Part shown: one piece after another, positions 12,988-52,500 of the stretch | Numbering within the stretch: the first letter of the stretch is position 1 | Layout of the letters: every line of letters begins with the position of its first letter | Origin: Guillardia theta CCMP2712 | Taxonomy: Eukaryota; Protista; Cryptophyta | Direction of reading: 5' to 3' | Length of the DNA stretch: 64,000 bases | NCBI RefSeq assembly: GCF_000315625.1 | Contig: NW_005434594.1 | Location: 180,482-244,481 of the forward strand | Notes under the pieces: model-generated | What the model saw: the letters and a program-made list of their open reading frames with translations, nothing else | Told to the model about the DNA's origin: nothing | The model's database searches: none | Translations under genes and position numbers: made by a program

Positions 12988-13876
12988 ATCGAGGGCCACT
13001 AGAGTGGTCAAGTGCTGTTTGCGAAGGGTGGGGGTAGTCTGACCACGGGTCCTGTAATAGGCCTTTTAAATCACCCCACCATTTGTAATGTCAGCAATGG
13101 CCTAAAGAAGGGGTATATGAACAGAATTGGCAATGCACAAAGATCACTACAACACATTGCTCGCTTATGAGGGGTAGGGACCTCTACAAGTAATTTAATC
13201 GACTGTGCGGAAATGCGCGTTGCAACCAAGAGGGTACTCGATTGGTAGTCGAGGGGTGGGGGTGGATGGTGGGGAAAAAAGGGTAGCTATAAAGGATATT
13301 GGTGAGGGTGGGTCTGTGTTAAAAGTAGTTATACACCTTCGAGATCGAGGCTGCTCGTATACGGATATGTGTCAAGCGCTGTATTCATGCATCGATTTGT
13401 CCATTGTAAAACAGTCAGTTTAAAACACTGACTCCTTACTACGAAATCCTCGTTAAGATTTCATCATGCTTCCGTTATATCGCTCGGATTGGTACGAAAG
13501 GAGAGGGTTTGGTTGTGGGAAAAATATTGTAAAATCGGAACATCTCCAGATTCTATCCCAACGGTTAGAAGACCGTGACATGCAGGGCTCATGACCTCTT
13601 CCTTTCTTTTCATTTCACCACTGTGAGTCTAACAACGTCACTATAAAATTTGAAATCTAAAGATACCTATTTCGAATTTATACCAGTGATGGTGCTGAAC
13701 CTCATGAATATTTCGGGCCGGGGCCCGGGCCGGGCGGTTCAGATCCGACCAGGCTGAGTGCGGGTGGTCAATAGCGGGGACGTGGTCAATGGGGGGCCAG
13801 GAGTGCGAGCAGGTGTACGATCGAGACTGAAGGAGCGGAACTCGATGGCGGGAGGAGGAGTGACGAGGCGTGTGCG

Positions 13877-15889
13877 ATGGTGACTAGATCGAGCTGCGAA
13901 GAGGATATGAAGAGCTCAACACAACGCGTGAGGAGGGAGCCGGTGAGCTGTAGGGCTGCGTCAGCTCTCTTGGCGCTGGCGTTTCTATGTTTGTGCAGCG
14001 GGGAGACAGCAGGAGCGGGGCTAGCAAGTATGTGCTTCAATCTACAGCCGTGCGCCAATCATGCCCTTCAAAGGAGAGATTTCCTGTGTAGACATCAGTG
14101 TGTGCATTTTTCGGCTGGTCGGCAACTGCGATCTTTTGCGACAAGATGCCGCCTGCCTCCTGTTGTGAAGTGCAGCATGGAGCAGAGTAGCGATCTCTCC
14201 TCGCTCCCTCCCGAGCTCCAGCGCCTGTGCTCATGGCTTGCTGAGAGCAGAAATGACAAGGAGGCGGCGATCAAGCTCGTCCAACTTGGCGACAGCCTGG
14301 AGCTATACATGGGCAAGTCAGAGAGGAGGGGGGGGGAGAAGGTAAGGGTGCCTGGCTGCATCTCAAACGTGCGGGTCTCTGTCGCCAGCAAGGAGGATGA
14401 AAGCGGATCGCTGAGAGTCTCACTGGACGGGGACGCGGACGCGAGGGTAGCTAGAGGCATGCTGGCGCTGCTTGTCAAGGGACTTGGCGGGCTGACGGCG
14501 CAGGAGGTCCTGTCGACACGGTCCGACGACATCATCCAGGCAGCGAACTTGAAGAGCCTGCTGCCCACCGGAAGGAACGACGGGCTCAGGAGCATGCTGG
14601 CAACGTTCCAAACGCTCATCGAGAACGAGCTCAAGGGTCGAAAGAAGGAGACAGTAGTTCAAGATGCTGGTGCGCATGCCCCTGCCGAGGCCCGGCAGGT
14701 ATGGGCGTGGGGAGGGAGGAGCGAGGAAGTAGCTGTGCTCCTGTCAGGAGGAGTTGATTCCTCTGTCGCACTGGAGCTCGTTCGGCGGCAGGGCTTCAAG
14801 CCTCGTGCCTTCTACTTGCGGATATGGCTGGAGGACGAGCTAGCACACCTTGGAGAGTGTCCGTGGGAGGAGGACTGGAGTTACGCTTCCTCTGTGGCAG
14901 AGCAGCTCAAAGTGCCGCTGGAGTCGATATCGCTGCAGGAGGAGTACTGGGAGCAGGTGGTGGAGTACCTGATCAGGGAGGCGAAGATGGGGAGGACGCC
15001 GAACCCTGACATCATGTGCAACAGCAGGATCAAGTTCGGCATGTTCGAGGAGTACGTGGGGAAGCATTTCAGCCGCGTTGCCTCGGGTCACTATGCAGTG
15101 AGCTGCCACGATGACGTGGGGACAAGGCCGTCCCGGCTGATGATGTCACCTGACAAGGTCAAGGACCAGACTTACTTCCTGTGCAACCTGCGTCAGGATC
15201 AACTCAAGCACGCCCTCTTCCCTATAGGAGGCTACACCAAGGAGAAGGTGCGGGAGTTGGCGAGGGAGTTCAACCTGCCGACGCAGAGGAGGAAGGACAG
15301 CCAAGGGATCTGCTTCCTGGGCAAGCTCAAGTTCGAAGACTTCGTCGGGCATCACCTCGGAGAAGACCCGGGCCCTGTCATTGACTTCCACACAGGCCGG
15401 GAGCTAGGGGAGCACCGAGGCCTCTGGTTCTACACGATCGGGCAGCGGAAGGGACTGGGAAGCGCTACTAGGAAGGTTACTCACCTTGGACCCTGGTTTG
15501 TAGCCGGCAAAGACAGGGAAAGGAACATGCTGTACGTGTCCAACCAGTATGACGTCATCGAGGGTCCAAGAAGAAGTTTCGATGTGGAGCAGATTAACTG
15601 GATGGCTGGGAGCCTCCCGGAGGACGATGCGCTGCGGCTACGGATCAAGACTCGCCATGGCCCCAACATTCACGACGGGCTGCTCACTCTGTCCCAGGGG
15701 AAACTCAGTGGGCGTGTCTCGCTCGACGGGAGAGACTCTGGGCTGGCGCCCGGTCAGTGGGCGGCGCTGTATGATGGGGAGGAGTGCATAGGAGGGGGGA
15801 TGATAGCTGACTCTACCTTCCTTACCAAGCCGGAAGAGGAGGAGGAGGAGAATGGAGAACTTGCTGTTGCCTTCGGGGAGGACAAGTGA
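13877..15889 (+). CDS. mnmA: SufE-domain / tRNA-specific 2-thiouridylase MnmA fusion with a putative bipartite plastid-targeting leader
   Basis: Uninterrupted 670-aa ORF. SufE-like domain at ~14204-14630 (LPPELQRL...VPGCISNV...DADARVARGMLALLVKGL...LLPTGRNDGLRSML). MnmA motifs: SGGVDS, NPDIMCN, ASGHYA, KDQTYFL, DSQGICF, YTIGQRKGL, APGQ. Confidence 0.95.
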   Translation: MVTRSSCEEDMKSSTQRVRREPVSCRAASALLALAFLCLCSGETAGAGLASMCFNLQPCANHALQRRDFLCRHQCVHFSAGRQLRSFATRCRLPPVVKCSMEQSSDLSSLPPELQRLCSWLAESRNDKEAAIKLVQLGDSLELYMGKSERRGGEKVRVPGCISNVRVSVASKEDESGSLRVSLDGDADARVARGMLALLVKGLGGLTAQEVLSTRSDDIIQAANLKSLLPTGRNDGLRSMLATFQTLIENELKGRKKETVVQDAGAHAPAEARQVWAWGGRSEEVAVLLSGGVDSSVALELVRRQGFKPRAFYLRIWLEDELAHLGECPWEEDWSYASSVAEQLKVPLESISLQEEYWEQVVEYLIREAKMGRTPNPDIMCNSRIKFGMFEEYVGKHFSRVASGHYAVSCHDDVGTRPSRLMMSPDKVKDQTYFLCNLRQDQLKHALFPIGGYTKEKVRELAREFNLPTQRRKDSQGICFLGKLKFEDFVGHHLGEDPGPVIDFHTGRELGEHRGLWFYTIGQRKGLGSATRKVTHLGPWFVAGKDRERNMLYVSNQYDVIEGPRRSFDVEQINWMAGSLPEDDALRLRIKTRHGPNIHDGLLTLSQGKLSGRVSLDGRDSGLAPGQWAALYDGEECIGGGMIADSTFLTKPEEEEEENGELAVAFGEDK

Positions 15890-15931
15890 TGGGTTGGCCG
15901 ACGACCAAGTATCTCGAGTTTTTGTCGCGAT

Positions 15932-17164
15932 TCATTCTACTTCTTTATCTTCCTTATATCTTCTAGCGAATACACTTGTGCGATCATGTCGTGAATGGCT
16001 GTCTTCCGCACTCTTCACCTTACTCTCCTCCTCCGCATTGCGTTGTCTCGTCGAATTCTCATCAAGCAGGAGGCCCCTGTACCAACGGTCAGAGCATGTC
16101 CTTACCATTACAACGTCATGCCAATCCCACCTGGCTCGTCCCTCGTCAAGAGCTGGAGGGCGAAGACAGCATGCCTCAGGCGCCCGCAAGAGCTTCCCTG
16201 CCATAAAGTTCTGTCACTAGCGGCAATTGCTCCAGAGAGCAGAGAAGATCGGCTGAGAGAGAAGGCTCATGTACAACGCAAGGACAGGAGCAGAGCAAAC
16301 GGAGAGGAGAAGCGACAGGAACAAGGTGGAGCGATGGGGTGCAGGAAAGAGACATCGTGCGGGGAAGGAAGAGACTGGCAGCTAACCGTGTTGACCAAGC
16401 TTGACAAGCCTCTAAGGATGGGCTCGAGGATGCCGAGGTTGCTGTTGATCATGTCCTGAATCCTCCTCGGCCCGATAAGGCTGCCGAGCGCTATGGCAGC
16501 CGCATTCGCAACTTCATCGTCATCAACCTAGAAGTCACTCAGGACGGCAATGGAGGAAGTTTGAGACCTCGATGATACGTGCGATGCTGCCAAGAAGCGC
16601 TGCCACTTGCTTGCCTTCAAGGTTGTGAAGGAAGAACTTCTCCCTGTCTCCCAGGCCGCCAATCTGCCTGCACATCCTTGCAGCTTCCTGTACGTTGGGA
16701 GAGCATGCGCCTTGAACAAGCTCGTTGACTTTCCCCCTAGCAGCTCGCTCGCCCTCCTCCCACTCCTTGGCGAACCTGCCGCCTCCAGACGAGCTCTGCA
16801 TGGCCGGACTCTCAGTCATCCTTGTTGGGATGCTTGGCATTTCGGCTGGAATCTCTGCAACTGGAGAGCCTTTCCTTTGATTGAAAGCAACACCAACAGC
16901 AGGCAGCTGCTGCCTGTTCACCGGGAGGAGGGGAACTGATCCCCTCCTCCTGATGCTGGTGACCTGACCGTTGCTGAGATTCTTCAGCTGGAGCTGAACG
17001 AAGTCAATGGAGATGTTTTTGGACAGCATCAGACTGTTCTGGTGTGTGGCCGATGCCTCCGAGAGCTTAGCGCAGTTTTCCCTCGTGAACAGAACCCACT
17101 CTGAGCTCGTAGGGCTCAGGTACTCCCATGCGTGGTGACTTTCTGGTCGCCTTTCTCGCATCAT
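15932..17164 (-). CDS. WWE-domain protein with a helical (ARM-like) C-terminal part, multi-exon
   Basis: AWEYLSPTSSEWVLFTRENCAKLSEA...ISIDFVQLQLKNLSNGQVTSIRRR fits the WWE pattern (W..W..E; IDF..M.Q.N..TG..R.IRR). A downstream exon reads VDDDEVANAAAIALGSL. GT-AG introns are present. Confidence 0.6.
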
Positions 17165-17527
17165 CTCAGAGCTGAATGGCGGCACGAGCCCCTGCGCACA
17201 TCCAGTCCTGCTCGACCCAGTCCCCTGCCTGCACACTTTCTGCTGACTCTTACTCTTGCCTTGGGTCGCTAGCCGCGCACGGCCGCACACACCCGCCTCT
17301 CATATCACCCTTGCCACCTCCCATCCCTTTCATTTCGAACAAGTTCACAGTGCAGCCCCCTGCTCTCTTCCTCTCTCTTTCTCTCCCTCTCTCCCTCTCT
17401 CGAGTCTCCTCCCCCTCCCCGAGTTTAGTCTTGTCAAACGTCCGTTAGAACCGCGGCCGCAGGGTATCAATTTCAGTTCCCGGCCGCCCGGCCGCCGGGG
17501 CGCCGGGCCCGGCCGTCACTCATCCAG

Positions 17528-17941: not shown

Positions 17942-19872
17942 TCAAGCGCGTGACCGTTGTAAGGTGTCCTGTTTCTTCTTGGCCAACAGCTTCGCTACCA
18001 AATTATTCACCTGCACAGGAAAACCTCCTTCAGAATCTCAGCAGTGCCAGCCGATCACGTTACCTCCTCGGCCTTCTTGTTCAACTCGAGGATCCTCTTC
18101 TCCTGCTGGACTAGCTGGCTGGACAGGTTACCCACCAGCTCAGGAACGTCCGTCTGCAAGGCCCCAGTGAGCATCCGAGGGGCAGAGAGCGGGCAAGACC
18201 TGAAGGTTGTTGGAGAAACTCTCGTCACTCGTTTCCTTGAAATCGTTGATGCTCTCAAGAAGCGGAAGGTTTGACAGGACCTGAGACACGCAAAGCAGTC
18301 AGGGGATGGACAAGAGACAGAAAGAGCAGAGGCACAATGTAAGACAAGGAAAGACGGGAGCCAGAGGACCATGGGGCGGAGAGGAGGAAGGAAAAGGGAG
18401 TGAAAAGGGAAGAGTCGTAGTAGTGAGGAGATAAAAAGAGGGAGGAGGGAGGAGGGAGGAGGGAGGAGGGAGGAGGTTCACTTGCGCTCGAAGATCCATG
18501 TTCTTTCTCCTCGCAGACTTGAAGTCCGGGATCATCATATAGCCTCCTCGGGTGCTCCCTCGTCGCTCCCCCTCCATGTACTCCTTGTGAGCCCTGATCC
18601 AACGCTGGATGACGACAGCGGCCTTGTGCTTGAGGTCCTTGCGGAGGGTGATCTTGTCCATGACGGCGATCACCTTCGACTCGGCGCGGGAGAGAGTCAA
18701 CTTCGCTATCACCAGGTTGACAGTGATTGCTAGCATGACAACCGCTACGATAGACGCCATGACAGAAACCATTCGGCCGAGCAAGGTGGTAGGGAACTCA
18801 TCGCCGTACCCCACCGTCGTCATGGTGATGATCGTCAGCCAAACGCAGTTCGCAAAATGCTGGAGGGCGCCGTTGTCGACGACTCGTTCGAACACCATCA
18901 TCATGTATGCGAACATGACGATTTGCAGGAGAGTAAGCACTATGACAACCTGCATGCTGTTCGCAATGACATACTTCAGAATGAAGCTCTCGTCGATCTT
19001 GACTCTATTCATCCTTCCCAGGGCAACTGTTGATTCCGACTGGAGATCTGATATGCACTCCCCATAGAAACGCGGCACGTAAAAGAACCTTACAAACATA
19101 AGGCAACAAAGGATGCTGTTCAACTCGTAGATTGACGCACGGCCCAACCCCTTGTTCCAGATCGTGACATTCACATCCAGAAGAGGGAGTGGTTGAGGTA
19201 ACATGATGAGGACATCGATAAGGAACTGAGACCAGTATCCTCCTCCCTTGAGGCTGGAGATGCTGACTCCAGGAGGCAGTCGAATACCTGAAAGCCGTCG
19301 CAGGTTGATCAAGGTCTCATAGTATCTAGAAAATGAGGTAAGGAACGAACTGGAAAAACAACGAACTAGGTCGACTCACTTGTATAGGAAATATAGAGTA
19401 AGAATAGTCGTGGTGACAACAAGCACTCTCAAAGTGAAGGAAATCTTTGTGACATTGTAAAAGTCATCAAGGCTATCCCATCGAATTTCTAACAAGAGAT
19501 GTTACTCAAAATCAGAAACAAAGTGTCAGGCATTTCACCGTTGTCTGTAACAGCCAACACAACGCCAAGAATTGCGAAGATGAAAGTCCACATGCAGTTC
19601 TGTCGTCTCATAGTGAGCTGTCTGACTCGCTCCTCTCCGGGTAAGAAGCCTGAACCAAGCCCAGGGTCCATCCGGTTATCATTCATGCAGTCTCTCGCTT
19701 GCAGCGATGCAGCCAATGCCTCCATATCAGGCTGTCCAGAGAGAACGTTGGCCTTGGATCGAAACGTGCCCCCAGCCTGCCCTTCCTTTGTGGACTCGCG
19801 TTCAGCTGCATTGCTGTCTCGCAGATGTTGAGAAGCAGTGCCTCGGGGCATGCTCATGGGGCTGGCCTGCAT
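17942..19872 (-). CDS. Small-conductance Ca2+-activated (SK/KCNN-like) potassium channel
   Basis: Pore motif WLTIITMTTVGYGDEFPTTLLGR, then S6 followed by KLTLSRAESKV...KHKAAVVIQRWIR (calmodulin-binding region typical of SK channels) and a C-terminal coiled coil. Multi-exon. Confidence 0.85.
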
Positions 19873-26887: not shown

Positions 26888-29800
26888 TCAGCCCTCTCCG
26901 AGCCCTTCGTAACATGTCAACCCAGCAAAGTTCTGCACAGTATCGTCAGCCCCCTTGGAGATGAGATAGTTTCCAAGGTCCGTGTAGCCATACGTGAAGC
27001 AAAAATGCAGTGGAGTCTGCCCATTATGATTCTGCGTGTTCAGCGCGGCCCCTCGCCTCAGCAGAGCCTTGATGATGGACTTGTGGCCGTTCTGAGCTGC
27101 GATGTTAAGAAGAGTGTTCCCAGCTGGATCTTTGAGGTCCACCGGACAGCCCGAGTCCAGCAGGGCTATCAGCTCGGACTTCTTGCCATGTCGCACCTTG
27201 GAGTAGGCTGACTTCCATGCCGTCGTCTCGTCCTCAGCCGCCATCGCTCGGAGCTCGTCCTTGGAGAGCTCCAGCAGCTCCGTCGACTTCTTCCTCGCCA
27301 TCGGCTGAGGAGCTTTCTCCGGGAGGTTGCGATCAGAGGCGTCGCCCCCCATGTCGTCTGCTCCATCCTCCTCTGCCTCGTAGGATCCAGCTGGAATGTT
27401 CTTGGGCCTCAGCCGAATCTCCTGCCCAGCCTGCATGGCCTTGAGAGCGTGCAAGTCTGGCTCTTCATCCGCATCATCATCCTGCTCGAAGGACACGGAA
27501 GGCTTCCCCATGACTTCCAACGACTCTCTCTCGCGTCTGAACCGCTCACGGTCCTCCATGCGCCTCCTCCGCTCAAGCCGCAGCTGCTGCTTCCTCTCGC
27601 CCTCGTCCACCTCAGGACCCTCCTGCGCGTCCCTCCACCCGCGGTCCACAAGAGCCTCGTCCGCTCCCTTGTCTGCCCTCGGAGCCTGTGGATAGGCCTC
27701 TGCTTCCAGCGCTTGCTCCTTGGCGGTTGCTGGCGGTTGGTACGCTTCCTCGGGCCTGTCAGCGGTGTAGACAGTCTGCTTGATGGTCGAGCTCATGATC
27801 TGCTCGATGCTCTCGATGTCCGGCAGCTCCGTATCCGCCTCGAGCTTCCCGTAGAGGCGCTGCAGAGTTGACTCGATGGTGTGAATGCGAGAGAGCAGGT
27901 GCTGCTTGTTCTTGGCGTTCTTGGGGAGCCGCCGGTCATAGGACAACACAGGCTTCTTGTCCTCCAGCCTATACTCCGCCATCCCCTTGGCTCCTGAGTT
28001 GCTGCCTCTGCGCTTCTCCGCATCCTCCTCATGCGCGACCTCGATGGCTTCCTTCTCTGACACGAGAGCCCCACCCTCGTTCTTCGCTCTGCTCTCCAGC
28101 TCCTCCCTCGACCGAAGGTATGCAGGGGTTTTCTCCTCTCCTCCTCCCACCGAGAACTTGACAGCCTTCTCTGCTGACGTGTAGCTGGCAGCCCCGACAG
28201 ACGTCATCCGTGATATGGGCACCGACGGGCCGAAGATGCCCCGGAAGTTTGAGATGAGAGCGTCGGCAGTGTCTTCGTGCGGGCACAGGATGGAGACGTC
28301 GAGGACGGCCTGGTCGAAGGGGCGAGACTCGCGCATCGGGTCATCCTCCACCTTGATGGGACGTACGACTCCCGAGTCGACCTCGAACGTGATCACAGTG
28401 ATCGGAGACCCTGGGACTGCGAGTCTGACGGAGATCGACTCCTCGGGTATCCTCAACAGCTTCGCAAGGTGGATCCGCTGCTTCTCCGCAAACTGCATCC
28501 TTGCCTTCTCGTCGACGAAGGAGACGTCGAACTTCATCTGGATCAGGTCAGGAGCCACGGACTCCATCATCCCGGGCTTGTTCTTGACAGTCTCGAACTG
28601 CTTCTGCTTCAGCTCTTCCGCACCACCCACCCCTTGCCTCTCGAGGGTGACGACGTTAGGGGCCAACCTCTGACTTTCTCCCTCAGTTCCGAACGCCATG
28701 TACTGCTCGGGTATCGCCGCCTTGCCCAACTTCTCTCCGTTCTTCCCCTTCCTCTTCTCCCTCCTGTCCCCCGCGCTCAACCCCGCGGGCTCACAGGGGA
28801 TGGTAGTCCTGGGGTCTTCCCTCCCTGTCACCTTCTGCGCCAGCTCATACTCGATCTCCTCCACGGCCTTGGTGAGCTTCAGCGAGGGCATTAGACTGGC
28901 ATCCTCCTTGAGCTTCTCCTCCATCCTCAGATCGTGCTCGTCCATGCGATCGTACCGCAGGTCCTCCACCCCTTCGTCCTTCCTGGCCAAGATCGCAGTC
29001 CGAGGCCCCATGGCTCCGCGTTGCGCGGGGAGGAAGTTGAGCTCGTCTTCCTGTTCCTTCAGCCTCCTGGTATTCTCCACCTCCTGGTAAGGAATCTTCA
29101 CCTGCTCCTCGAAGTTCTTATCCGATATCACCGTGACGTCCTGAAACCTCTTCGCTGGCCCTGGAGGTCTTCTTGAGACCTTGGCGCTGGAGTACTGGTC
29201 GTCAAGCATGATCTCTCTCCCTGGCTTGTACACTGGGTCAACGCCCATGTCCTCAGACTCGGCAATCTGTCCTTTGACTTTCTGCACTTGAGAGTAGATC
29301 GACTGTACTTCTCCGTCAAAGATCTCCAGCTGCTCAGGAGCCTCATGCCGAACTCCCGGCACGCTGCTGTCGCTCAGTCCCTTCATCCGCCCTTCGTCTT
29401 CGTAACGAGGGAAGTCTTGCACCTCCTTGGAGTACGCCTTGAGCGAGTCCAGCACCTCTGCTGGAGCTGTCTTCTGAACCCGCTCCTGCACGGCTCTGTC
29501 CTCGACTTCGACGTAGCTTCCGAACGTCTCGTGAAGCCTCGTGCTCAGCAGGCTGTGGCCGGCTCCTTGACTGGTCTCCAGCATACTCACAGCTACTGGC
29601 CTGACGTCCAGCGCACTTTCGCCGTTCTCGGCTGCTGCCGGTCCTGACGAAGAGGACGAGGAGGGAGGTATCAGAGCTGCGTCAGAGGCCCTGACTTTCA
29701 GCCTCAGCAGGGTGATGGGAGATCCAGGTTTGACATCCGAGATCTCGATGCACTCTATTGGTATCCCGAGGGCCTTGGCCAGCTTCTCGCGCTGGGACTT

Positions 29801-32800
29801 TGCAAAGAGCTGCCTCTCCTCGTCGTTGGAGAACGCTAGGTCGTACTTGAGCTCGATGACTTCCCCAGCTTCAGCTTCGTCTGGCTCGTGGTTGTACTTG
29901 ATTTCATCTTGGGGGATCCTGAGGAATTCATCGAAGGCCCATTCAGAGTTCTTGACGATGTTGTCTGAACTCGTCTCCCTCCCTTGACCTTCGAACTGCA
30001 GAGCATTGGTGCCAAACGACTTCATGAACTCTGGCGCGTATCCTCTATCCGACGTGGAGGCGAACTCCGAGCTTGTGGTCTCAATCTGCAACACGTGCGC
30101 GCCTTTCTCCCGATGAGTCAACGAGATGAAATCACTTTCTTCGGCCACCCGAGCAGATTCCTCGTCCTTATCATACATGTCCTTCTCACCTCTTGGCTGC
30201 TCATACTCCCAGAGGAAACTCGGGAGGCCGTATGCTACCTTGAACTCTTCAAAGTCTTCTTCCATCGTGCCCATGTTAGAGATGGGAGTACAGATCATCT
30301 CAACGCGGCTCTCCCTCTGCTTCTCAACCGTCCCTCTCCTCTTCACCTCGGGCAGCTGAGAGCCTTCATCTGAAGAACCAGCGACTTGGAAAGAAACAGC
30401 CATGCTATCCGCCCTGTCATACTCGGACGAAACGTTCCGACCGGACACATTCCTAGAATCAGTGTGCTCGGCGCACCTGTCCGTATCGCTCGACATGCCA
30501 AAGTGCGCTTCTCCTTGGACCAGCGCCTGCAGATGAGGAGGTTGGAACTCGTCTTGTTCGAAGATGGAGGTGACTGAGAAAGACTCGGCCCCGGCTTGAT
30601 AGCAGGATGCGCTTGTGCCCACTCGCTGCCCTTCCACTTGCTCAGGGAGGCTGATGGACTGCCATTTTCCGCCCTGACTTCCCACACGGATCTCAGAGCG
30701 AAATTGGAACGACGAGGCCTGGTTGATCATACGAGAGTCTCGGTCAACCTGGTCCCCATCAAGGTGCTTGTCTATCGGTCTTGACTCGCCCCCGTCTCCC
30801 AGGCTCCTTTCCGTCTTCCCCCCCGGGTCCTTCTCCTCGCTGAATTCCTCCATGGCATTGCACTTAGACGACCGGATCGCATCCACTGAGCTGAGAGCGC
30901 TCTGCTGCTGAGAAGGTGCTGCAGCAGCTGCGGCTGCGGCTGAGGTAGTGGAGGAGGCGGCAGAAGCAGCAGCATGCTTGACGTTGACACTGGCGCTGAC
31001 CTCCTTGGGTCTGTCGGCGACTGTTTGCTCCGCAGGTTGCGGGTCAACAGATGGATGAGAAGGTTCCTGAGGGGGAGCAGAGAGATCGACCGCCGGCTCA
31101 GTTGTTTCTCCTCCGACGACCCCAGCTGCTGACCCAGCAACGGCTTCCGGCGCAGGAGGCAAGACATGCGCAACCACGGGGATGTCGACGGTCTCGATCC
31201 CCTGGATCGGCTTGTCCTCGAAGTCATCTTCCTGCGCTGAGTCCCAGCCTTCGTCCCCTTGGGTGGCAGGGGCAGCGAAGTCAACATCAGGCTCCTTGGC
31301 TTGCACAGCTGGTTTTGTTTCTGATTCAGGAGCAGCGAGCTCGTGAGAGCTCTCTGGAGGAGCTTCTTCGTCAGGGATGCGAACGGCACTCTCGACAGGC
31401 GCAATCTCGATTTCTTGTTCCTCCACATCCTGTCCTTCGAAAACTACAGAAGCATCAGACTGCTCCGACCCCTGTTTCGATTCCGGCCGATCCCCGACTT
31501 CGGGTGTGGAAACAACTTCTTCCTGATCAGCTAGCGGCTCAACGGCCTCGACAAGCTCTGGGGATGGAGCCGTCTGATCTCCTTGCGCCTCTTCCCCCAT
31601 AGGCTCCTCTTGGGCCTGCGCCTGCATCTCCTGCTGCTGCAAGGCTGTATCACCCTCGAGCTCAGCCTAGTCAAACGGGTCAGACAACAAGATGAGATCC
31701 GATTTCACAACCTGTCCCGCATCAGGCTCAATCTCCGAGGCGTCGGCTGGCTGGATTTCAGCAGCTCGGAATACAGCCTCTGCCATCCTCGACTGCTCGG
31801 TGGCATCCGATATGTCGCCCCCTTCAAGGGGGATTAGCGCTTCCATAGGAGAAGTTTGCGGGGTGGTTTTGACGTTAGGTGGCTGCTTTTGGATGGAGGG
31901 CAACACGACAGGCTTTGCTGCTCCACCTGCTACGCTGCTCTCCCCCTGTACAGATTCCTGTGAAACCTTCTTCAATTTCATCTCAGCTGCCCGGGCTTTT
32001 GCCTCCGCCACTCTCAGCTTTTGTTCCGCCTCCAGCGCTTTCCTCTCTGCTTCCTCCCTCCGTTTCTTTTCTTCTCTCATGGACATCTTGAACTCTTGCT
32101 CTCTAGAACCCTTTTCCGGCCCTTTAGCAGTCCTTGCTTTCTCTTGGGTCCGCGACCCAGCACTCCGTGCCCTGCTGCCGGAGTTGGTGCTGAAAAAAAT
32201 ATCAAACGGAACAGAAATCACAATCATCAAACTCATTGATCACAGTTCCAAAACTGATGAAAGACAAAGAGAGGAGATATGAGGGAGACAATGCACTGAC
32301 CTCTGATTTTCTTGTGCAAGAACGTTCTCATCATTGACACTCGATGATGACTCTGATGCCGGTCTCTCTCGCTCCTGAACTTTCTTGCTGGACTTGGGGA
32401 GATGAGCCTTCTTCCCTTTGGTCTTGCTGGAGCTACGTTTTGTCTCAGGAAGTAAGACGAAATCCGGCGAGAACCCATCATCGAGGTCTCCCTGCACTGA
32501 GGAAGGAGCAGATGACAATATCAAGTCAAGATCCTCATCCGAACCACTCTCAGAGTGTTCGTGCTTCCTTCGATACGGCGAGGCGTTCTCTTCGTCCGAG
32601 TCCCTTCGTTTCGACTTCCTCTGCTTGTCTCTTGATCTCGTCCGCGACTTGGAAGGCCTCCTCGAGAACTTGTCATCTCTCCTCCTCTCGTCCTCCTCGT
32701 CCGAGACGTTTTCACTTTCCCGTGGATATTCCACCTGCATCGGAAGAGGATGACCCTTCTGCAGGCAAGGTATCTATCAGCACGATCAAAAGTGAGTGAA

Positions 32801-49597: not shown

Positions 49598-52500
49598 ATG
49601 GCAGGAAAGGTAGATCTGTCGGTATGCGGACGAGTCTGCTTGCTGGGGGAGCACTCAGACTGGGCAGGAGGGTACAGGTAGGTGCCTGTATGATTGTTCC
49701 TCTCCTTCTCATGCTCTGCTTGTATGATCGTTCCCCTCCTTCTCATGCTCTGCCCCTTCCTCATGCCTCGTCTCTCAACACCATCATCCCCCAACAACCC
49801 CCTGTCGCATCTTCCTCCCTATGGTGCCCTGAGCCTTTAGGAACAACCATCCCTCTGACTTGCTCCATCATATCCTGACCCCTTGCGGACAAGACCTGCT
49901 TCTTGCGCTCCCATTGATACCTATCGTGACGTCTTGGTATCGACGATCTGACCACCTTCTGAAGGAGGACACACGCCAAGATCTTGCCAGGGCGATGTAT
50001 CGTTACAGGGACTGACCAGGTAAGGACGGAGCATGGCCATGGAGCAAGGGCCTGATGCTGACTTGCAGACGTTGGAGGCAACAGCATGGGAGCACCCTAA
50101 CAAGCTCATCCTGACGACGACGAGGGACAACGGGGAGGTGGTGGGACCATGGGAGTGTGACTTTCGGGACGAGGAGCTCTTGAGAGTAGCAAAGGGAGGA
50201 GGGTTCTGGAGCTATGCTGCGGGTGTTGCATATCAGGTGAAGACCTACTACCCGGTGAACGGTCTCGTTGTGGAGAATCACACAACGACGCTGCCGATGA
50301 AGAAGGGTTTGTCCTCCTCTGCTGCCTACTGCGTGCTGATAGCCAGGGCGTTCAGCAAAGTGTACGACCTGAGGATGCCTCCGAGGGCTGAGATGGAGAT
50401 GGCGTACTTGGGGGAGATCCTGACCCCGTCTCGGTGCGGGAGGATGGATCAGTGTTGTGCCTTTGGCAGAGTGCCTACCCTGATGTTCTTCGACGGGGAC
50501 TTGCTGCAAACAGAGAAGATAGACCCTCCCAAGGAGCCGATCTTCCTTGTTATCGTCGACCTCTGCGCTGCCAAGGACACGATGGAGATCCTTTCCTGCC
50601 TCAACAAGGCGTATCCTGTTGCCTCGAATGAGATTGAGGAGGGGGTGCAGAAACTACTTGGGGAGGTGAACGAGAAGATCGTGAAGGAGGCGGCAGAGGT
50701 TATCTCGCAAGGGGACGCGAAGCGCCTGGGGGAGTTGATGACGTATGCTCAAGAGCAGTTTGATAAGTTTGCTATCCCAGCTTGTCCTTCCCAGCTCACC
50801 GCTCCGAAGCTGCACGCCACTTTGACCCATCCGTCGATCCAGCCGCTCGTTTGGGGGGGCAAGGGCGTTGGATCGCAAGGTGACGGATGTGCGCAGTTCG
50901 TGGCCAGGTCGGAGGAAGCCCAGCAAGGTGATAGGAAGAAGTGGGGAAGTGAGGAGGGGGAGGAGGGGGGGCGAGGAGGGAGAGGAGGGGGGACGAGGAG
51001 GGAGAGGAGGGGGGACGAGGAGGAGGATGCTATGTTGATCGTGGCATGTTAGAGCTCCTCCGAGTGTGCAGAGACGAGCTGCAGCTGAACCCACTGTCCC
51101 TCTCCATCGGCAAGAAGCACTGCGTCAAGACCTGCGTCATCCCCTGCGCCGGAGAGTCTCCCCTACTCTTCCCCTGCTGCCAAGTCACTCCTCCCGCTCT
51201 CTTCCCTATCGTGACTCAGGATGGGATCGCCCAGGTGGGTAGGGAGAGCCGGGGGGAGGACAGGAGGAGGACGAAGGGGGGGGGGGAGAAATACAGATAG
51301 CGATGCCGTCATCACAATGACCTTGTATGTGAGTTTGTGACGTGTTATCTACTGCAGCCGGCTGTACTGCTGCTGGTCGAAGAAGCCCTGTCGGCAGGTG
51401 GGTTTGTGCTGGCAACATGCGAGTCTGGTGATGCCGGTGGTTCAGGAATAGAGCGAGTCTTCCTGGTTGTACGGCCGGAGGATCGACATTCGTTCGACAA
51501 GCTGTTCTCAGGTGATTTGACACAGGGAGGTCAATGTTGCCCTGATGCCCTGCTGAAGGTTCGCTGCCAAGTTCAAGGGTCTTCAACAGACTTCCTCTGA
51601 AGCAACAGTCAGCCGCTCGGAGGTCTGGAGGGGAGGAGACTATGGAAAGGCGCCGTCTTACGGCTTGTTCCTCCCTGTGCCAGGTTGACGGAGCTTGCGA
51701 AAGTTGTCAAACTGGTCACGCAGGTGCGATGATTGCTGGTGGAGGTGATCGAAGCTGAAGTCTTGACATGGCAGGATGAGCAGCTGGGGTTGGGACATGC
51801 GATCCTCTGTTGTCGGTGATGGAGCATGTGTCTTGATGTGATGTGATATGCTCCGTTGATTCAATGACTACAACAACTCATCTCATCTCACATCATTTCA
51901 CTTCACATCATATCATCACTTCACATCATATCACATCATATCACAGCACATCATATCACAGCACATCACAGCACAGCACAGCACATCACAGCACAGCACA
52001 TCACAGCACAGCACAGCACAGCACAGCACAGCACAGCACAGCACAGCACAGCACAGCACAGCACAGCACAGCACAGCACAGCACAGCACAGCACAGCACA
52101 GCACAGCACAGCACAGCACAGCACAGCACATCACCTCTTGCTGTCGTTGCTTGTACTTGCAAACAAAAGTTAATCTCTCATCCTTCAGCTCTTACATGGA
52201 CGTTGGGGAACCATTCCTCGTTATGTTGGGAGATCATCTTTACTGCTCTGCGCTCCCCAACAAGTCCTGCGCACAGCAGGTAAGTCACAAAGACGCCAAT
52301 CCTGAGGGTCTCATCGCCTTTCAGCTACTTGAAGCATTTCAAGGAAACTGCATCGTAGCTGCCCATGTTCGTCATTCGTCGCCCTGGCTCCTTCTTCCTT
52401 CTTCTCCTTGTCCTCGCCTCATCCTCATCCTCATCTTCATCCTCATCCTCCTCCACCACCACCACCGCCTCCTCCACCTCCTCCCTTATCCTCCTCTACC

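What the first reader, a model, noticed from the sequence alone, without database searches (positions are those of the whole stretch)
13877..15889. SufE-MnmA fusion: a built-in SUF sulfur relay for plastid tRNA 2-thiolation
Seen: one intron-free ORF joins a complete SufE-like domain, with the persulfide-carrying Cys intact (VPGCISNV, TGC at 14357), through a short linker to a full MnmA that retains SGGVDS and both catalytic Cys (NPDIMCN, DSQGICF). Established: SufE accepts persulfide from the desulfurase SufS. E. coli MnmA receives sulfur through IscS-TusABCDE, and B. subtilis MnmA from YrvO. The SufE fusions characterised in plant plastids are SufE-BolA and SufE-NadA. Apicoplast SufS has been implicated in supplying sulfur to MnmA. 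Inference: this is a Rosetta-stone fusion defining a SufS -> SufE -> MnmA route for s2U34 synthesis in a red-derived plastid, with SufE replacing the Tus relay. Alternatively SufE may help build an Fe-S cluster on the DxxC+C site. I do not know of a characterised example.
Basis: partly seen in the sequence, partly recalled or inferred. Interest (0 to 1): 0.88.

Follow-up and report, generated by a model that had tools for sequence, protein, structure and literature searches.

The report
Plastid SufE-MnmA fusion, already known kind
This cryptophyte nuclear gene really does join a sulfur-carrier domain (SufE) to the tRNA 2-thiouridine synthase MnmA, but the same fusion occurs across red algae and all sampled red-plastid lineages and had already been noted, with the same sulfur-relay idea, in Toxoplasma and Plasmodium.

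Summary
Window 13877-15889 (+) is one 670-aa ORF. It holds a Pfam-significant SufE domain (residues 125-245, Cys161 = TGC 14357-14359) and a complete D-type MnmA (residues 284-643). The PP-loop, Asp378, Cys381 and Cys479 are all intact.

Transcript-like contigs from three studies cover 13803-15986 colinearly. They show no gap or splice and give no coverage of the flanks. The public gene model for this locus (431 aa, starting at Met240) misses the SufE domain.

The architecture is not new. Yang 2022 lists a SufE domain in T. gondii MnmA. Swift 2023 describes a SufE-like domain in P. falciparum MnmA and proposes the same SufS -> SufE-like domain -> MnmA route.

What I add:
- The fusion is present in red algae, cryptophytes, brown algae, diatoms, Vitrella and apicomplexans.
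- It is absent from the green-lineage homologues tested and from the 80 best bacterial mnmA loci.
- The fused MnmA domains are compatible with a single origin (AU p 0.93).
- The SufE Cys is present in 170 of 170 family members that cover it.

The cis sulfur relay is the best-supported mechanism but remains untested. Verdict: new member of a known kind, moderate interest. The scan's notes hold no earlier SufE-MnmA finding.

The parts
13803..13876 (+). 5' untranslated leader (minimum extent)
   Evidence: Transcript-like contigs start at 13803 (X1), 13836 (X5) and 13876 (X3), with no coverage upstream. An in-frame TAG lies at 13772-13774.
13845..13883 (+). Short upstream ORF (12 codons, other frame) that overlaps the main ATG
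   Evidence: Read directly from the sequence. It lies inside the leader covered by the X1 and X5 contigs. Its function was not tested.
13877..15889 (+). Complete SufE-MnmA coding sequence, 670 codons plus stop, no intron
13877..14035 (+). Signal-peptide-like region (residues 1-53; hydrophobic core 27-42)
   Evidence: Kyte-Doolittle scan. The stretch up to 'ASMC|F' aligns with Hanusia 'GTIC|F'. The cleavage site is inferred.
14036..14185 (+). Transit-peptide-like region that begins with Phe54 (residues 54-103; 8 R/K against 2 D/E)
   Evidence: The rule that Phe sits at +1 for red complex plastids, cryptophytes included, comes from PMC4329603. This region is only 21% identical to Hanusia, as expected for a presequence.
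14207..14665 (+). SufE domain (folded residues 111-263; Pfam match 125-245 = 14249-14611)
   Evidence: Pfam 63.7 bits. AF2 domain model has pLDDT 92.3. All 18 significant PDB matches are SufE or CsdE, with TM up to 0.79.
14357..14359 (+). Cys161 codon (TGC), the presumed persulfide-carrying cysteine
   Evidence: It aligns with the Cys of the SufE/CsdE loop. It is present in 119/119 and 170/170 family members that cover the column.
14666..14716 (+). Flexible linker (residues 264-280)
   Evidence: pLDDT is below 50 for model residues 165-181. Across the family, the distance from the end of the SufE match to the PP-loop has a median of 37 aa and ranges 17-152.
14726..15805 (+). MnmA (residues 284-643): PP-loop ATPase domain, PRC barrel and C-terminal barrel
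   Evidence: 2hma 1.8e-78, 2der 3.4e-73. Foldseek TM 0.87-0.88 to 2hma and 2det.
14744..14761 (+). PP-loop SGGVDS (residues 290-295)
   Evidence: Invariant in 125/125.
15002..15022 (+). NPDIMCN (residues 376-382): Asp378 and Cys381 of the D-type DxxC site
   Evidence: Asp and Cys are invariant in 125/125. The D-type definition comes from PMC13066941.
15296..15316 (+). DSQGICF (residues 474-480): second catalytic Cys479 (codon 15311-15313)
   Evidence: Invariant in 125/125.
15812..15886 (+). Acidic C-terminal tail (residues 646-670), disordered in the model
   Evidence: pLDDT is below 50 for model residues 553-571. It is 76% identical to Hanusia.
15890..15986 (+). 3' untranslated region (contigs end at 15966-15986)

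Best explanation
This is a nuclear gene of a cryptophyte. The inferred source is Guillardia theta or a very close relative. It encodes a plastid-targeted protein made of a signal peptide, a transit peptide, a SufE domain, a linker of about 17 residues and a D-type MnmA. Shown here: the architecture, the intact catalytic residues, an unspliced single transcript, and conservation of the whole arrangement across the red lineage. Inferred: in the plastid stroma the SufE domain docks on the SUF cysteine desulfurase SufS. It takes the persulfide onto Cys161 and passes it in cis, or across a dimer, to the MnmA active site (Cys381/Cys479). MnmA adenylates U34 of plastid tRNA-Lys, -Glu and -Gln and replaces O2 by sulfur. 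The fused SufE therefore plays the part that TusA-E play in E. coli. It gives tRNA thiolation its own tap on SufS, separate from stand-alone SufE, which feeds Fe-S assembly.
For: Domain and family calls are above the curated cut-offs. The SufE fold is confirmed, since the top 18 PDB matches are all SufE or CsdE. The MnmA fold has TM 0.87-0.88. SufE Cys161 is present in 119/119 and 170/170 members, Asp188 in 175/175 and Arg233 in 176/176, Theileria and Eimeria included. The MnmA PP-loop, Asp378, Cys381 and Cys479 are invariant in 125/125. A contiguous transcript covers both domains, and the Hanusia phi complete transcript has the same layout. The N-terminus has a hydrophobic core, then Phe54, then a basic stretch, as expected for a cryptophyte stromal presequence. 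The fusion has been kept across red algae, cryptophytes, brown algae, diatoms, Vitrella and apicomplexans, and the fused MnmA domains are compatible with one clade. In P. falciparum, loss of SufS or MnmA destroys the apicoplast but loss of stand-alone SufE does not, so sulfur reaches MnmA without free SufE (PMC10219651). The authors of that paper propose the same route.
Against: No experiment has tested the fused SufE domain in any organism. B. subtilis MnmA alone could replace PfMnmA in one of four attempts, so a fused SufE is not strictly required for SufS-dependent thiolation. I could not obtain model coordinates or inter-domain error estimates (pTM 0.67), so nothing shows that Cys161 can reach the MnmA site. 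Plastid targeting rests on inspection, not on a trained predictor or on localisation data. SufS and a stand-alone SufE of this genome lie outside the window and were not seen. The RNA nature of the contig-holding runs is the tool's guess. It is supported only by contig ends that coincide with the gene ends and by empty flanks.
Confidence: 0.68

Rival explanations
1. The SufE domain serves an Fe-S cluster rather than a Cys-persulfide relay. D-type MnmA can bind a labile [4Fe-4S] cluster on its Asp/Cys/Cys site. The fused SufE would bring SufS-derived sulfur to assemble or repair that cluster, or to load the sulfide on it that is then inserted into U34. The model for this is the SufE-NadA fusion of plants.
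For: The protein has the D-type DxxC...C site, invariant in the family. E. coli D-type MnmA coordinates an Fe-S cluster, and thiolation has been reported as cluster-dependent (PMC13066941 and its references 31, 33 and 34). From my own knowledge, in plant SufE3 the SufE domain is needed to load the [4Fe-4S] cluster on the fused NadA.
Against: Sequence cannot separate this reading from the persulfide relay, because the same residues serve both. The role of the cluster in MnmA is still debated (critical review cited). No scaffold domain is fused.
Confidence: 0.17
2. The SufE domain is mainly a docking and activating module. It recruits SufS and speeds its turnover, while the SufS persulfide passes directly to MnmA as in B. 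subtilis YrvO-MnmA. Cys161 would then matter for SufS activation rather than as a carrier to MnmA.
For: SufE raises SufS activity about 17-fold in P. falciparum. Swift et al. judge the Plasmodium system most like the direct YrvO-MnmA transfer. Bs MnmA without a SufE domain could substitute once.
Against: Known SufE activation of SufS works by accepting the persulfide on the same cysteine, so activation and carriage are hard to separate. Invariance of Cys161 fits carriage at least as well.
Confidence: 0.12
3. It is not one protein. The alternatives are an assembly or ORF artefact, two adjacent genes, or a MnmA-only product translated from Met240 as in the public 431-aa model.
For: The public annotation of this very locus gives a 431-aa protein that starts at Met240. 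A 12-codon upstream ORF overlaps the first ATG.
Against: Met240 lies inside the last SufE helix and would leave MnmA with no targeting sequence. Contigs from three studies run unbroken from 13803-13876 to 15966-15986. Hanusia phi has a complete 649-aa transcript with the same layout. More than 170 relatives from many lineages have it too.
Confidence: 0.02

Closest known systems
Apicomplexan apicoplast MnmA (T. gondii TGGT1_309110; P. falciparum MnmA)
   Same: The domain order is the same: N-terminal targeting sequence, SufE or SufE-like domain, then MnmA. Both carry out plastid tRNA s2U34 synthesis that depends on SufS, and the same relay hypothesis has been published. In the tree, the coccidian sequences fall in the same fused clade as this protein.
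   Different: This protein is compact (670 aa, against about 1084 in P. falciparum and about 1600 in T. gondii). It has no long insertions. Its SufE domain passes the Pfam cut-off over its full length, whereas the apicomplexan ones match weakly or only in part (25-51 bits with the family HMM). The host is a photosynthetic cryptophyte.
E. coli IscS-TusA-TusBCD-TusE-MnmA relay
   Same: The final enzyme (D-type MnmA, 37% identity, TM 0.88 to 2det) and the final chemistry are the same. A persulfide carrier stands between the desulfurase and MnmA.
   Different: The carrier here is one fused SufE domain, not five Tus proteins. The presumed desulfurase is the type II SufS, not IscS.
B. subtilis YrvO-MnmA
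   Same: A SufS-type desulfurase is dedicated to MnmA with no Tus proteins. The best PDB sequence matches are Firmicute MnmA (2hma, 9hlv).
   Different: In B. subtilis transfer is direct, and the specialisation lies in a second desulfurase. Here the specialisation lies in a second SufE that is covalently attached to MnmA.
Plant plastid SufE fusions (SufE1 = SufE-BolA, SufE3 = SufE-NadA)
   Different: The partner is different. The green-lineage MnmA homologues tested have no SufE domain.
E. coli CsdA-CsdE-TcdA
   Same: A SufE-family carrier (CsdE is the best PDB sequence match of the SufE part) is linked to a tRNA-modifying enzyme (from my own knowledge).
   Different: The proteins are separate, and the modification (ct6A37) and the enzyme family differ.

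Membership tests
SufE family (Pfam PF02657) | Profile match above the curated cut-off | tested here: met
   63.7 bits against a cut-off of 27, profile positions 8-119 of 121. The NCBIfam SufE and CsdE equivalog models match only below their cut-offs (34.9 against 160). It is therefore a SufE-family domain, not an equivalog of E. coli SufE.
SufE family (Pfam PF02657) | SufE/CsdE fold | tested here: met
   Domain model has pLDDT 92.3 and pTM 0.86. The 18 PDB matches with E <= 0.001 are all SufE or CsdE, with TM (target) 0.61-0.79.
SufE family (Pfam PF02657) | Conserved cysteine on the acceptor loop | tested here: met
   Cys161 in VPGC aligns with the CsdE/SufE 'GC'. It is present in 170/170 family members that cover the column.
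SufE family (Pfam PF02657) | Accepts persulfide from SufS and stimulates it | not testable with these tools
   This needs biochemistry.
MnmA, tRNA 2-thiouridine(34) synthase (TIGR00420 / NF001138) | Equivalog profile match above the curated cut-off | tested here: met
   TIGR00420 scores 355.3 bits (cut-off 237) and NF001138 scores 333.9 bits (cut-off 284), both over the full length.
MnmA, tRNA 2-thiouridine(34) synthase (TIGR00420 / NF001138) | PP-loop SGGxDS and the D-type Asp/Cys/Cys catalytic site | tested here: met
   SGGVDS at 290-295, Asp378, Cys381 and Cys479 are all present and are invariant in 125/125 relatives.
MnmA, tRNA 2-thiouridine(34) synthase (TIGR00420 / NF001138) | Three-domain fold | tested here: met
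   All three Pfam domains are found. Foldseek gives TM 0.87-0.88 and rmsd 2.5-2.9 to 2hma and 2det.
MnmA, tRNA 2-thiouridine(34) synthase (TIGR00420 / NF001138) | Thiolates U34 of tRNA-Lys/Glu/Gln | not testable with these tools
   This needs APM-gel or mass-spectrometric analysis of plastid tRNA.
Red-lineage plastid SufE-MnmA fusion (as in apicomplexan MnmA) | SufE N-terminal to MnmA in one polypeptide, expressed as one mRNA | tested here: met
   One ORF. Colinear contigs span the junction in three studies, though the RNA status of those runs is a guess by the tool. The orthologous complete Hanusia transcript has the same layout.
Red-lineage plastid SufE-MnmA fusion (as in apicomplexan MnmA) | MnmA domain belongs to the clade of fused sequences | tested here: met
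   The query lies in a clade of 32 fused sequences (SH-aLRT 99) together with red algae, brown algae, Vitrella, Eimeria and Besnoitia. Holding all 35 fused rows as one clade is not rejected (p-AU 0.934).
Red-lineage plastid SufE-MnmA fusion (as in apicomplexan MnmA) | Plastid localisation | tested here: inconclusive
   The N-terminus looks bipartite, with Phe54 after the hydrophobic core. No trained predictor and no localisation data were available.

The most novel reading that the evidence does not exclude
The SufE-MnmA fusion arose once, before or in the red-algal ancestor. It was then carried by secondary endosymbiosis into cryptophytes, ochrophytes, chromerids and apicomplexans. The green lineage either never had it or lost it. 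It would therefore be both a heritable marker of red-plastid ancestry and the physical basis of a two-branch SUF sulfur economy: stand-alone SufE feeds Fe-S assembly, and the fused SufE is an obligatory, Tus-independent cis relay for plastid tRNA thiolation. That would explain why SufS, but not free SufE, is needed to keep the apicoplast.
Probability: 0.45. Interest if true: 0.55.

Novelty: new member of a known kind. Interest (0 to 1): 0.4.

Why it matters
MnmA and SufS are essential for apicoplast maintenance in malaria and Toxoplasma parasites, and how sulfur reaches MnmA there is still unresolved. The apicomplexan proteins are very long and full of insertions, which makes them poor material for biochemistry. 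The cryptophyte and red-algal versions are compact and canonical. They carry the same invariant cysteine, so they offer a tractable model for testing the proposed SufS -> SufE domain -> MnmA transfer. The distribution (red lineage yes; the green homologues tested and the sampled bacteria no) also gives a clean evolutionary framing. It suggests that free SufE may supply MnmA in plants and cyanobacteria. In practice, the public gene model for this locus needs to be extended by 239 codons.

Tried and rejected
1. Bacterial origin or a bacterial precedent of the fusion. A scan of 185,579 species genomes gave at least 600 mnmA loci. The best 80 match only the MnmA part of the query. Neither tblastn nor a family SufE HMM finds SufE within 3 kb of mnmA.

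2. The green lineage. The best unfused eukaryotic relatives are from Selaginella, Vaccinium/Rhododendron, Riccia, Cymbomonas and Chlamydomonas schloesseri. They have N-terminal extensions of 80-170 aa but no SufE by Pfam. Glaucophytes, haptophytes and dinoflagellates could not be named among the hits.

3. Inter-domain geometry. The full-length AF2 model gives no coordinates or PAE through the tools, so the Cys161-to-Cys381 distance could not be measured.

4. Raw RNA reads. The only run on record as RNA (X20) laid just 2 reads in the 6% of it that was read, so it says little. The support comes from assembled contigs whose RNA status is a guess.

5. Artefact or two-gene reading: rejected (see rival explanations).

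6. The FastTree of 195 rows scattered the fused sequences into several groups. This was due to truncated representatives and to long, compositionally odd apicomplexan branches. The smaller IQ-TREE analysis and the AU test resolved it.

7. Findings search. There is no earlier SufE/MnmA note in this genome.
Full report
**Observation**

The window holds one uninterrupted ORF at 13877-15889 on the + strand, 670 codons. The first in-frame stop upstream is TAG at 13772-13774, and no other start codon lies in between.

Pfam places four domains:
- SufE (PF02657) at residues 125-245, 63.7 bits against a gathering score of 27.
- tRNA_Me_trans at residues 284-483.
- tRNA_Me_trans_M at residues 487-555.
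- tRNA_Me_trans_C at residues 566-643.

The NCBIfam equivalog models for MnmA are passed over their full length: TIGR00420 scores 355 bits against 237, and NF001138 scores 334 against 284.

- VPGCISNV at residue 158, with Cys161 encoded by TGC at 14357-14359.
- SGGVDS at residue 290.
- NPDIMCN at residue 376.
- DSQGICF at residue 474.

The Asp378-x-x-Cys381 plus Cys479 arrangement makes this a D-type MnmA in the sense of PMC13066941.

**Structure**

- An AlphaFold2 model of residues 100-670, built on a 38-sequence alignment, has mean pLDDT 85.9. It shows two confident bodies joined by a disordered stretch at residues 264-280.
- Foldseek matches the C-terminal body to MnmA crystal structures (2hma, 2det; TM 0.87-0.88). 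It matches the N-terminal body to SufE and CsdE (3g0m, 1mzg, 8vbs, 1wlo; TM 0.70-0.81).
- A separate model of the SufE domain has pLDDT 92.3 and pTM 0.86. Its 18 significant PDB matches are all SufE or CsdE.

**One gene, one transcript**

- Assembled contigs from runs of three different studies lie on the locus with no differences, gaps or joints.
- X3 gives a single 2110-nt contig over 13876-15985 at depth 194. X1 covers 13803-15109 and 15084-15986. X5 covers 13836-15966 in overlapping pieces.
- All three give zero coverage of 13200-13754 and of 16086-16500.
- The tool only guesses that these runs are RNA. Contig ends that coincide with the gene's ends, together with empty flanks, are what transcript assemblies give and genomic assemblies do not.
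- The one run on record as RNA laid only two reads in the fraction that was read, so it adds little.
- Independent support comes from Hanusia phi, a cryptophyte. Its transcriptome holds a complete 649-aa orthologue with the same layout from presequence to acidic tail.
- Identity to that orthologue is 21% in the presequence, 66% in SufE, 63% in the linker and 87% in MnmA. This is the gradient expected if every part is under selection in proportion to its role.
- The closeness to Hanusia, and a 408-kb contig held by NCBI, UniRef and EukProt, make Guillardia theta or a near relative the likely source. This is an inference.
- The public protein for this locus is 431 aa and starts at Met240, inside the last SufE helix. 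That gene model misses the presequence and the SufE domain.

**Targeting**

Residues 27-42 form a hydrophobic core. The sequence then reads ...ASMC-F54-NLQPC..., and a basic stretch follows (8 R/K against 2 D/E in residues 54-103). Hanusia has the matching ...GTIC-F-SQSPC.... [quoted passage not shown] Plastid stroma is thus the likely destination, but this rests on inspection only.

**Distribution**

Nearly all of the best 120 relatives in the 5.8-billion-protein search carry both SufE and the MnmA domains. Other searches widen the range.

| Group | Named examples |
|---|---|
| Red algae | Gracilaria, Agarophyton, Gracilariopsis, Rhodosorus, Purpureofilum |
| Brown algae | Ectocarpus, Discosporangium |
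| Chromerids | Vitrella |
| Diatoms | an Atlas cluster in which 97% of members carry SufE |
| Apicomplexans | an Atlas cluster; Eimeria stiedai, Besnoitia besnoiti, Theileria equi |

- Of the best 150 representatives in an exhaustive profile search, 65 carry a SufE match.
- The best unfused eukaryotic relatives are from the green lineage: Selaginella, Vaccinium/Rhododendron, Riccia, Cymbomonas and Chlamydomonas schloesseri. Pfam finds no SufE in them.
- In the best 80 bacterial loci from a scan of species-representative genomes, only the MnmA part of the query is matched. No SufE lies within 3 kb.

**Phylogeny of the MnmA domain**

- In an IQ-TREE analysis of 73 MnmA domains, 32 of 35 fused sequences form one clade (SH-aLRT 99). 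This clade includes red algae, the query with Hanusia, brown algae, Vitrella, Eimeria and Besnoitia.
- The green sequences form their own clade (SH-aLRT 100).
- Three long, compositionally odd fused sequences (Theileria equi and two unnamed) stray with weak support.
- Forcing all 35 fused sequences into one clade gives a tree that is better by 49.6 log-likelihood units than the one the quick search found, with p-AU 0.934. A single origin of the fusion is compatible with the data.

**Conservation within the family**

| Residue(s) | Present in |
|---|---|
| SufE Cys161 | 119/119 in one alignment; 170/170 in an HMM alignment of all SufE-bearing hits, including Theileria and Eimeria |
| SufE Asp188 | 175/175 |
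| SufE Arg233 | 176/176 |
| MnmA PP-loop, Asp378, Cys381, Cys479 | 125/125 |

The sequences not counted are truncated, or match the SufE profile only in part. A SufE domain kept merely as a spacer would not hold its acceptor cysteine invariant across this evolutionary span.

**What is already known**

- Yang et al. 2022 (PMC9420914) list a SufE domain (residues 519-589) ahead of the tRNA_Me_trans domains in T. gondii MnmA and localise the protein to the apicoplast.
- Swift et al. 2023 (PMC10219651) find a SufE-like structural domain in the 421-aa N-terminal extension of P. falciparum MnmA and in other apicomplexan orthologues. [quoted passage not shown]
- The same paper shows that deleting sufS or mnmA disrupts the apicoplast, whereas deleting stand-alone sufE does not. 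This is what a built-in SufE on MnmA would predict.
- I found no paper that tests the fused domain or describes its spread through red algae and the other red-plastid lineages. Only 4 to 6 papers in the library hold the relevant terms together.

**Mechanism**

The best-supported reading is a cis persulfide relay: SufS to Cys161 of the fused SufE, then to the MnmA catalytic cysteines, then to adenylated U34 of plastid tRNAs. The architecture, residues, transcript and conservation are shown. Every transfer step is inferred.

Two variants remain open. In the first, the sulfur serves a [4Fe-4S] cluster on the D-type site. In the second, the domain mainly recruits and activates SufS while transfer to MnmA is direct. 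The artefact or two-gene reading is effectively excluded.

**Verdict**

This is a new, compact and canonical member of a known kind. The added value lies in the evolutionary range, the invariance of the acceptor cysteine, a corrected gene model, and a better protein for testing the relay.

Noticed in passing
window 14594-15889 (+): The public protein for this locus (P0002, 431 aa; NCBI, UniRef, EukProt) starts at Met240 inside the SufE domain. It therefore lacks the presequence and SufE. The gene model should be extended to 13877.
   Followed up: yes
window 13845-13883 (+): A 12-codon upstream ORF in another frame ends at a TGA that overlaps the main ATG. It lies inside the leader covered by two of the three transcript-like contigs. 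It may exert translational control, but this was not tested.
   Followed up: partly
L001-L009 (genome-contig loci): The bacterial MnmA sequences most similar to the plastid-type MnmA (47-52% identity) come from Dependentiae/Babeliales, Planctomycetota, Gracilibacteria, Oligoflexus, Bdellovibrio-like and Limisphaerales MAGs, not from cyanobacteria. In the tree they sit near the green and fused eukaryotic clades with weak backbone support.
   Followed up: partly
P0277 (Riccia fluitans, 666 aa) and P0271 (Selaginella, 858 aa): Some green-lineage MnmA gene models carry other additions. The Riccia model has ankyrin repeats after MnmA. The Selaginella model has a 430-aa N-terminal extension with no Pfam match. 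These may be gene-model fusions.
   Followed up: no
window 16535-17290 (-), 18299-19312 (-), 26888-31642 (-), 50033-51052 (+): The neighbouring long ORFs show ordinary eukaryotic domains: WWE, an ion-channel pore, a 1584-aa ORF ending in ankyrin repeats, and a GHMP-kinase N domain. None relates to sulfur or tRNA metabolism, so the SufE-MnmA gene stands alone.
   Followed up: partly
P0210, P0208, P0228 (Theileria equi and two unnamed fused sequences): These fused sequences have long, compositionally biased branches and leave the fused clade in unconstrained trees. The AU test shows this is not significant. They still keep the SufE cysteine.
   Followed up: yes
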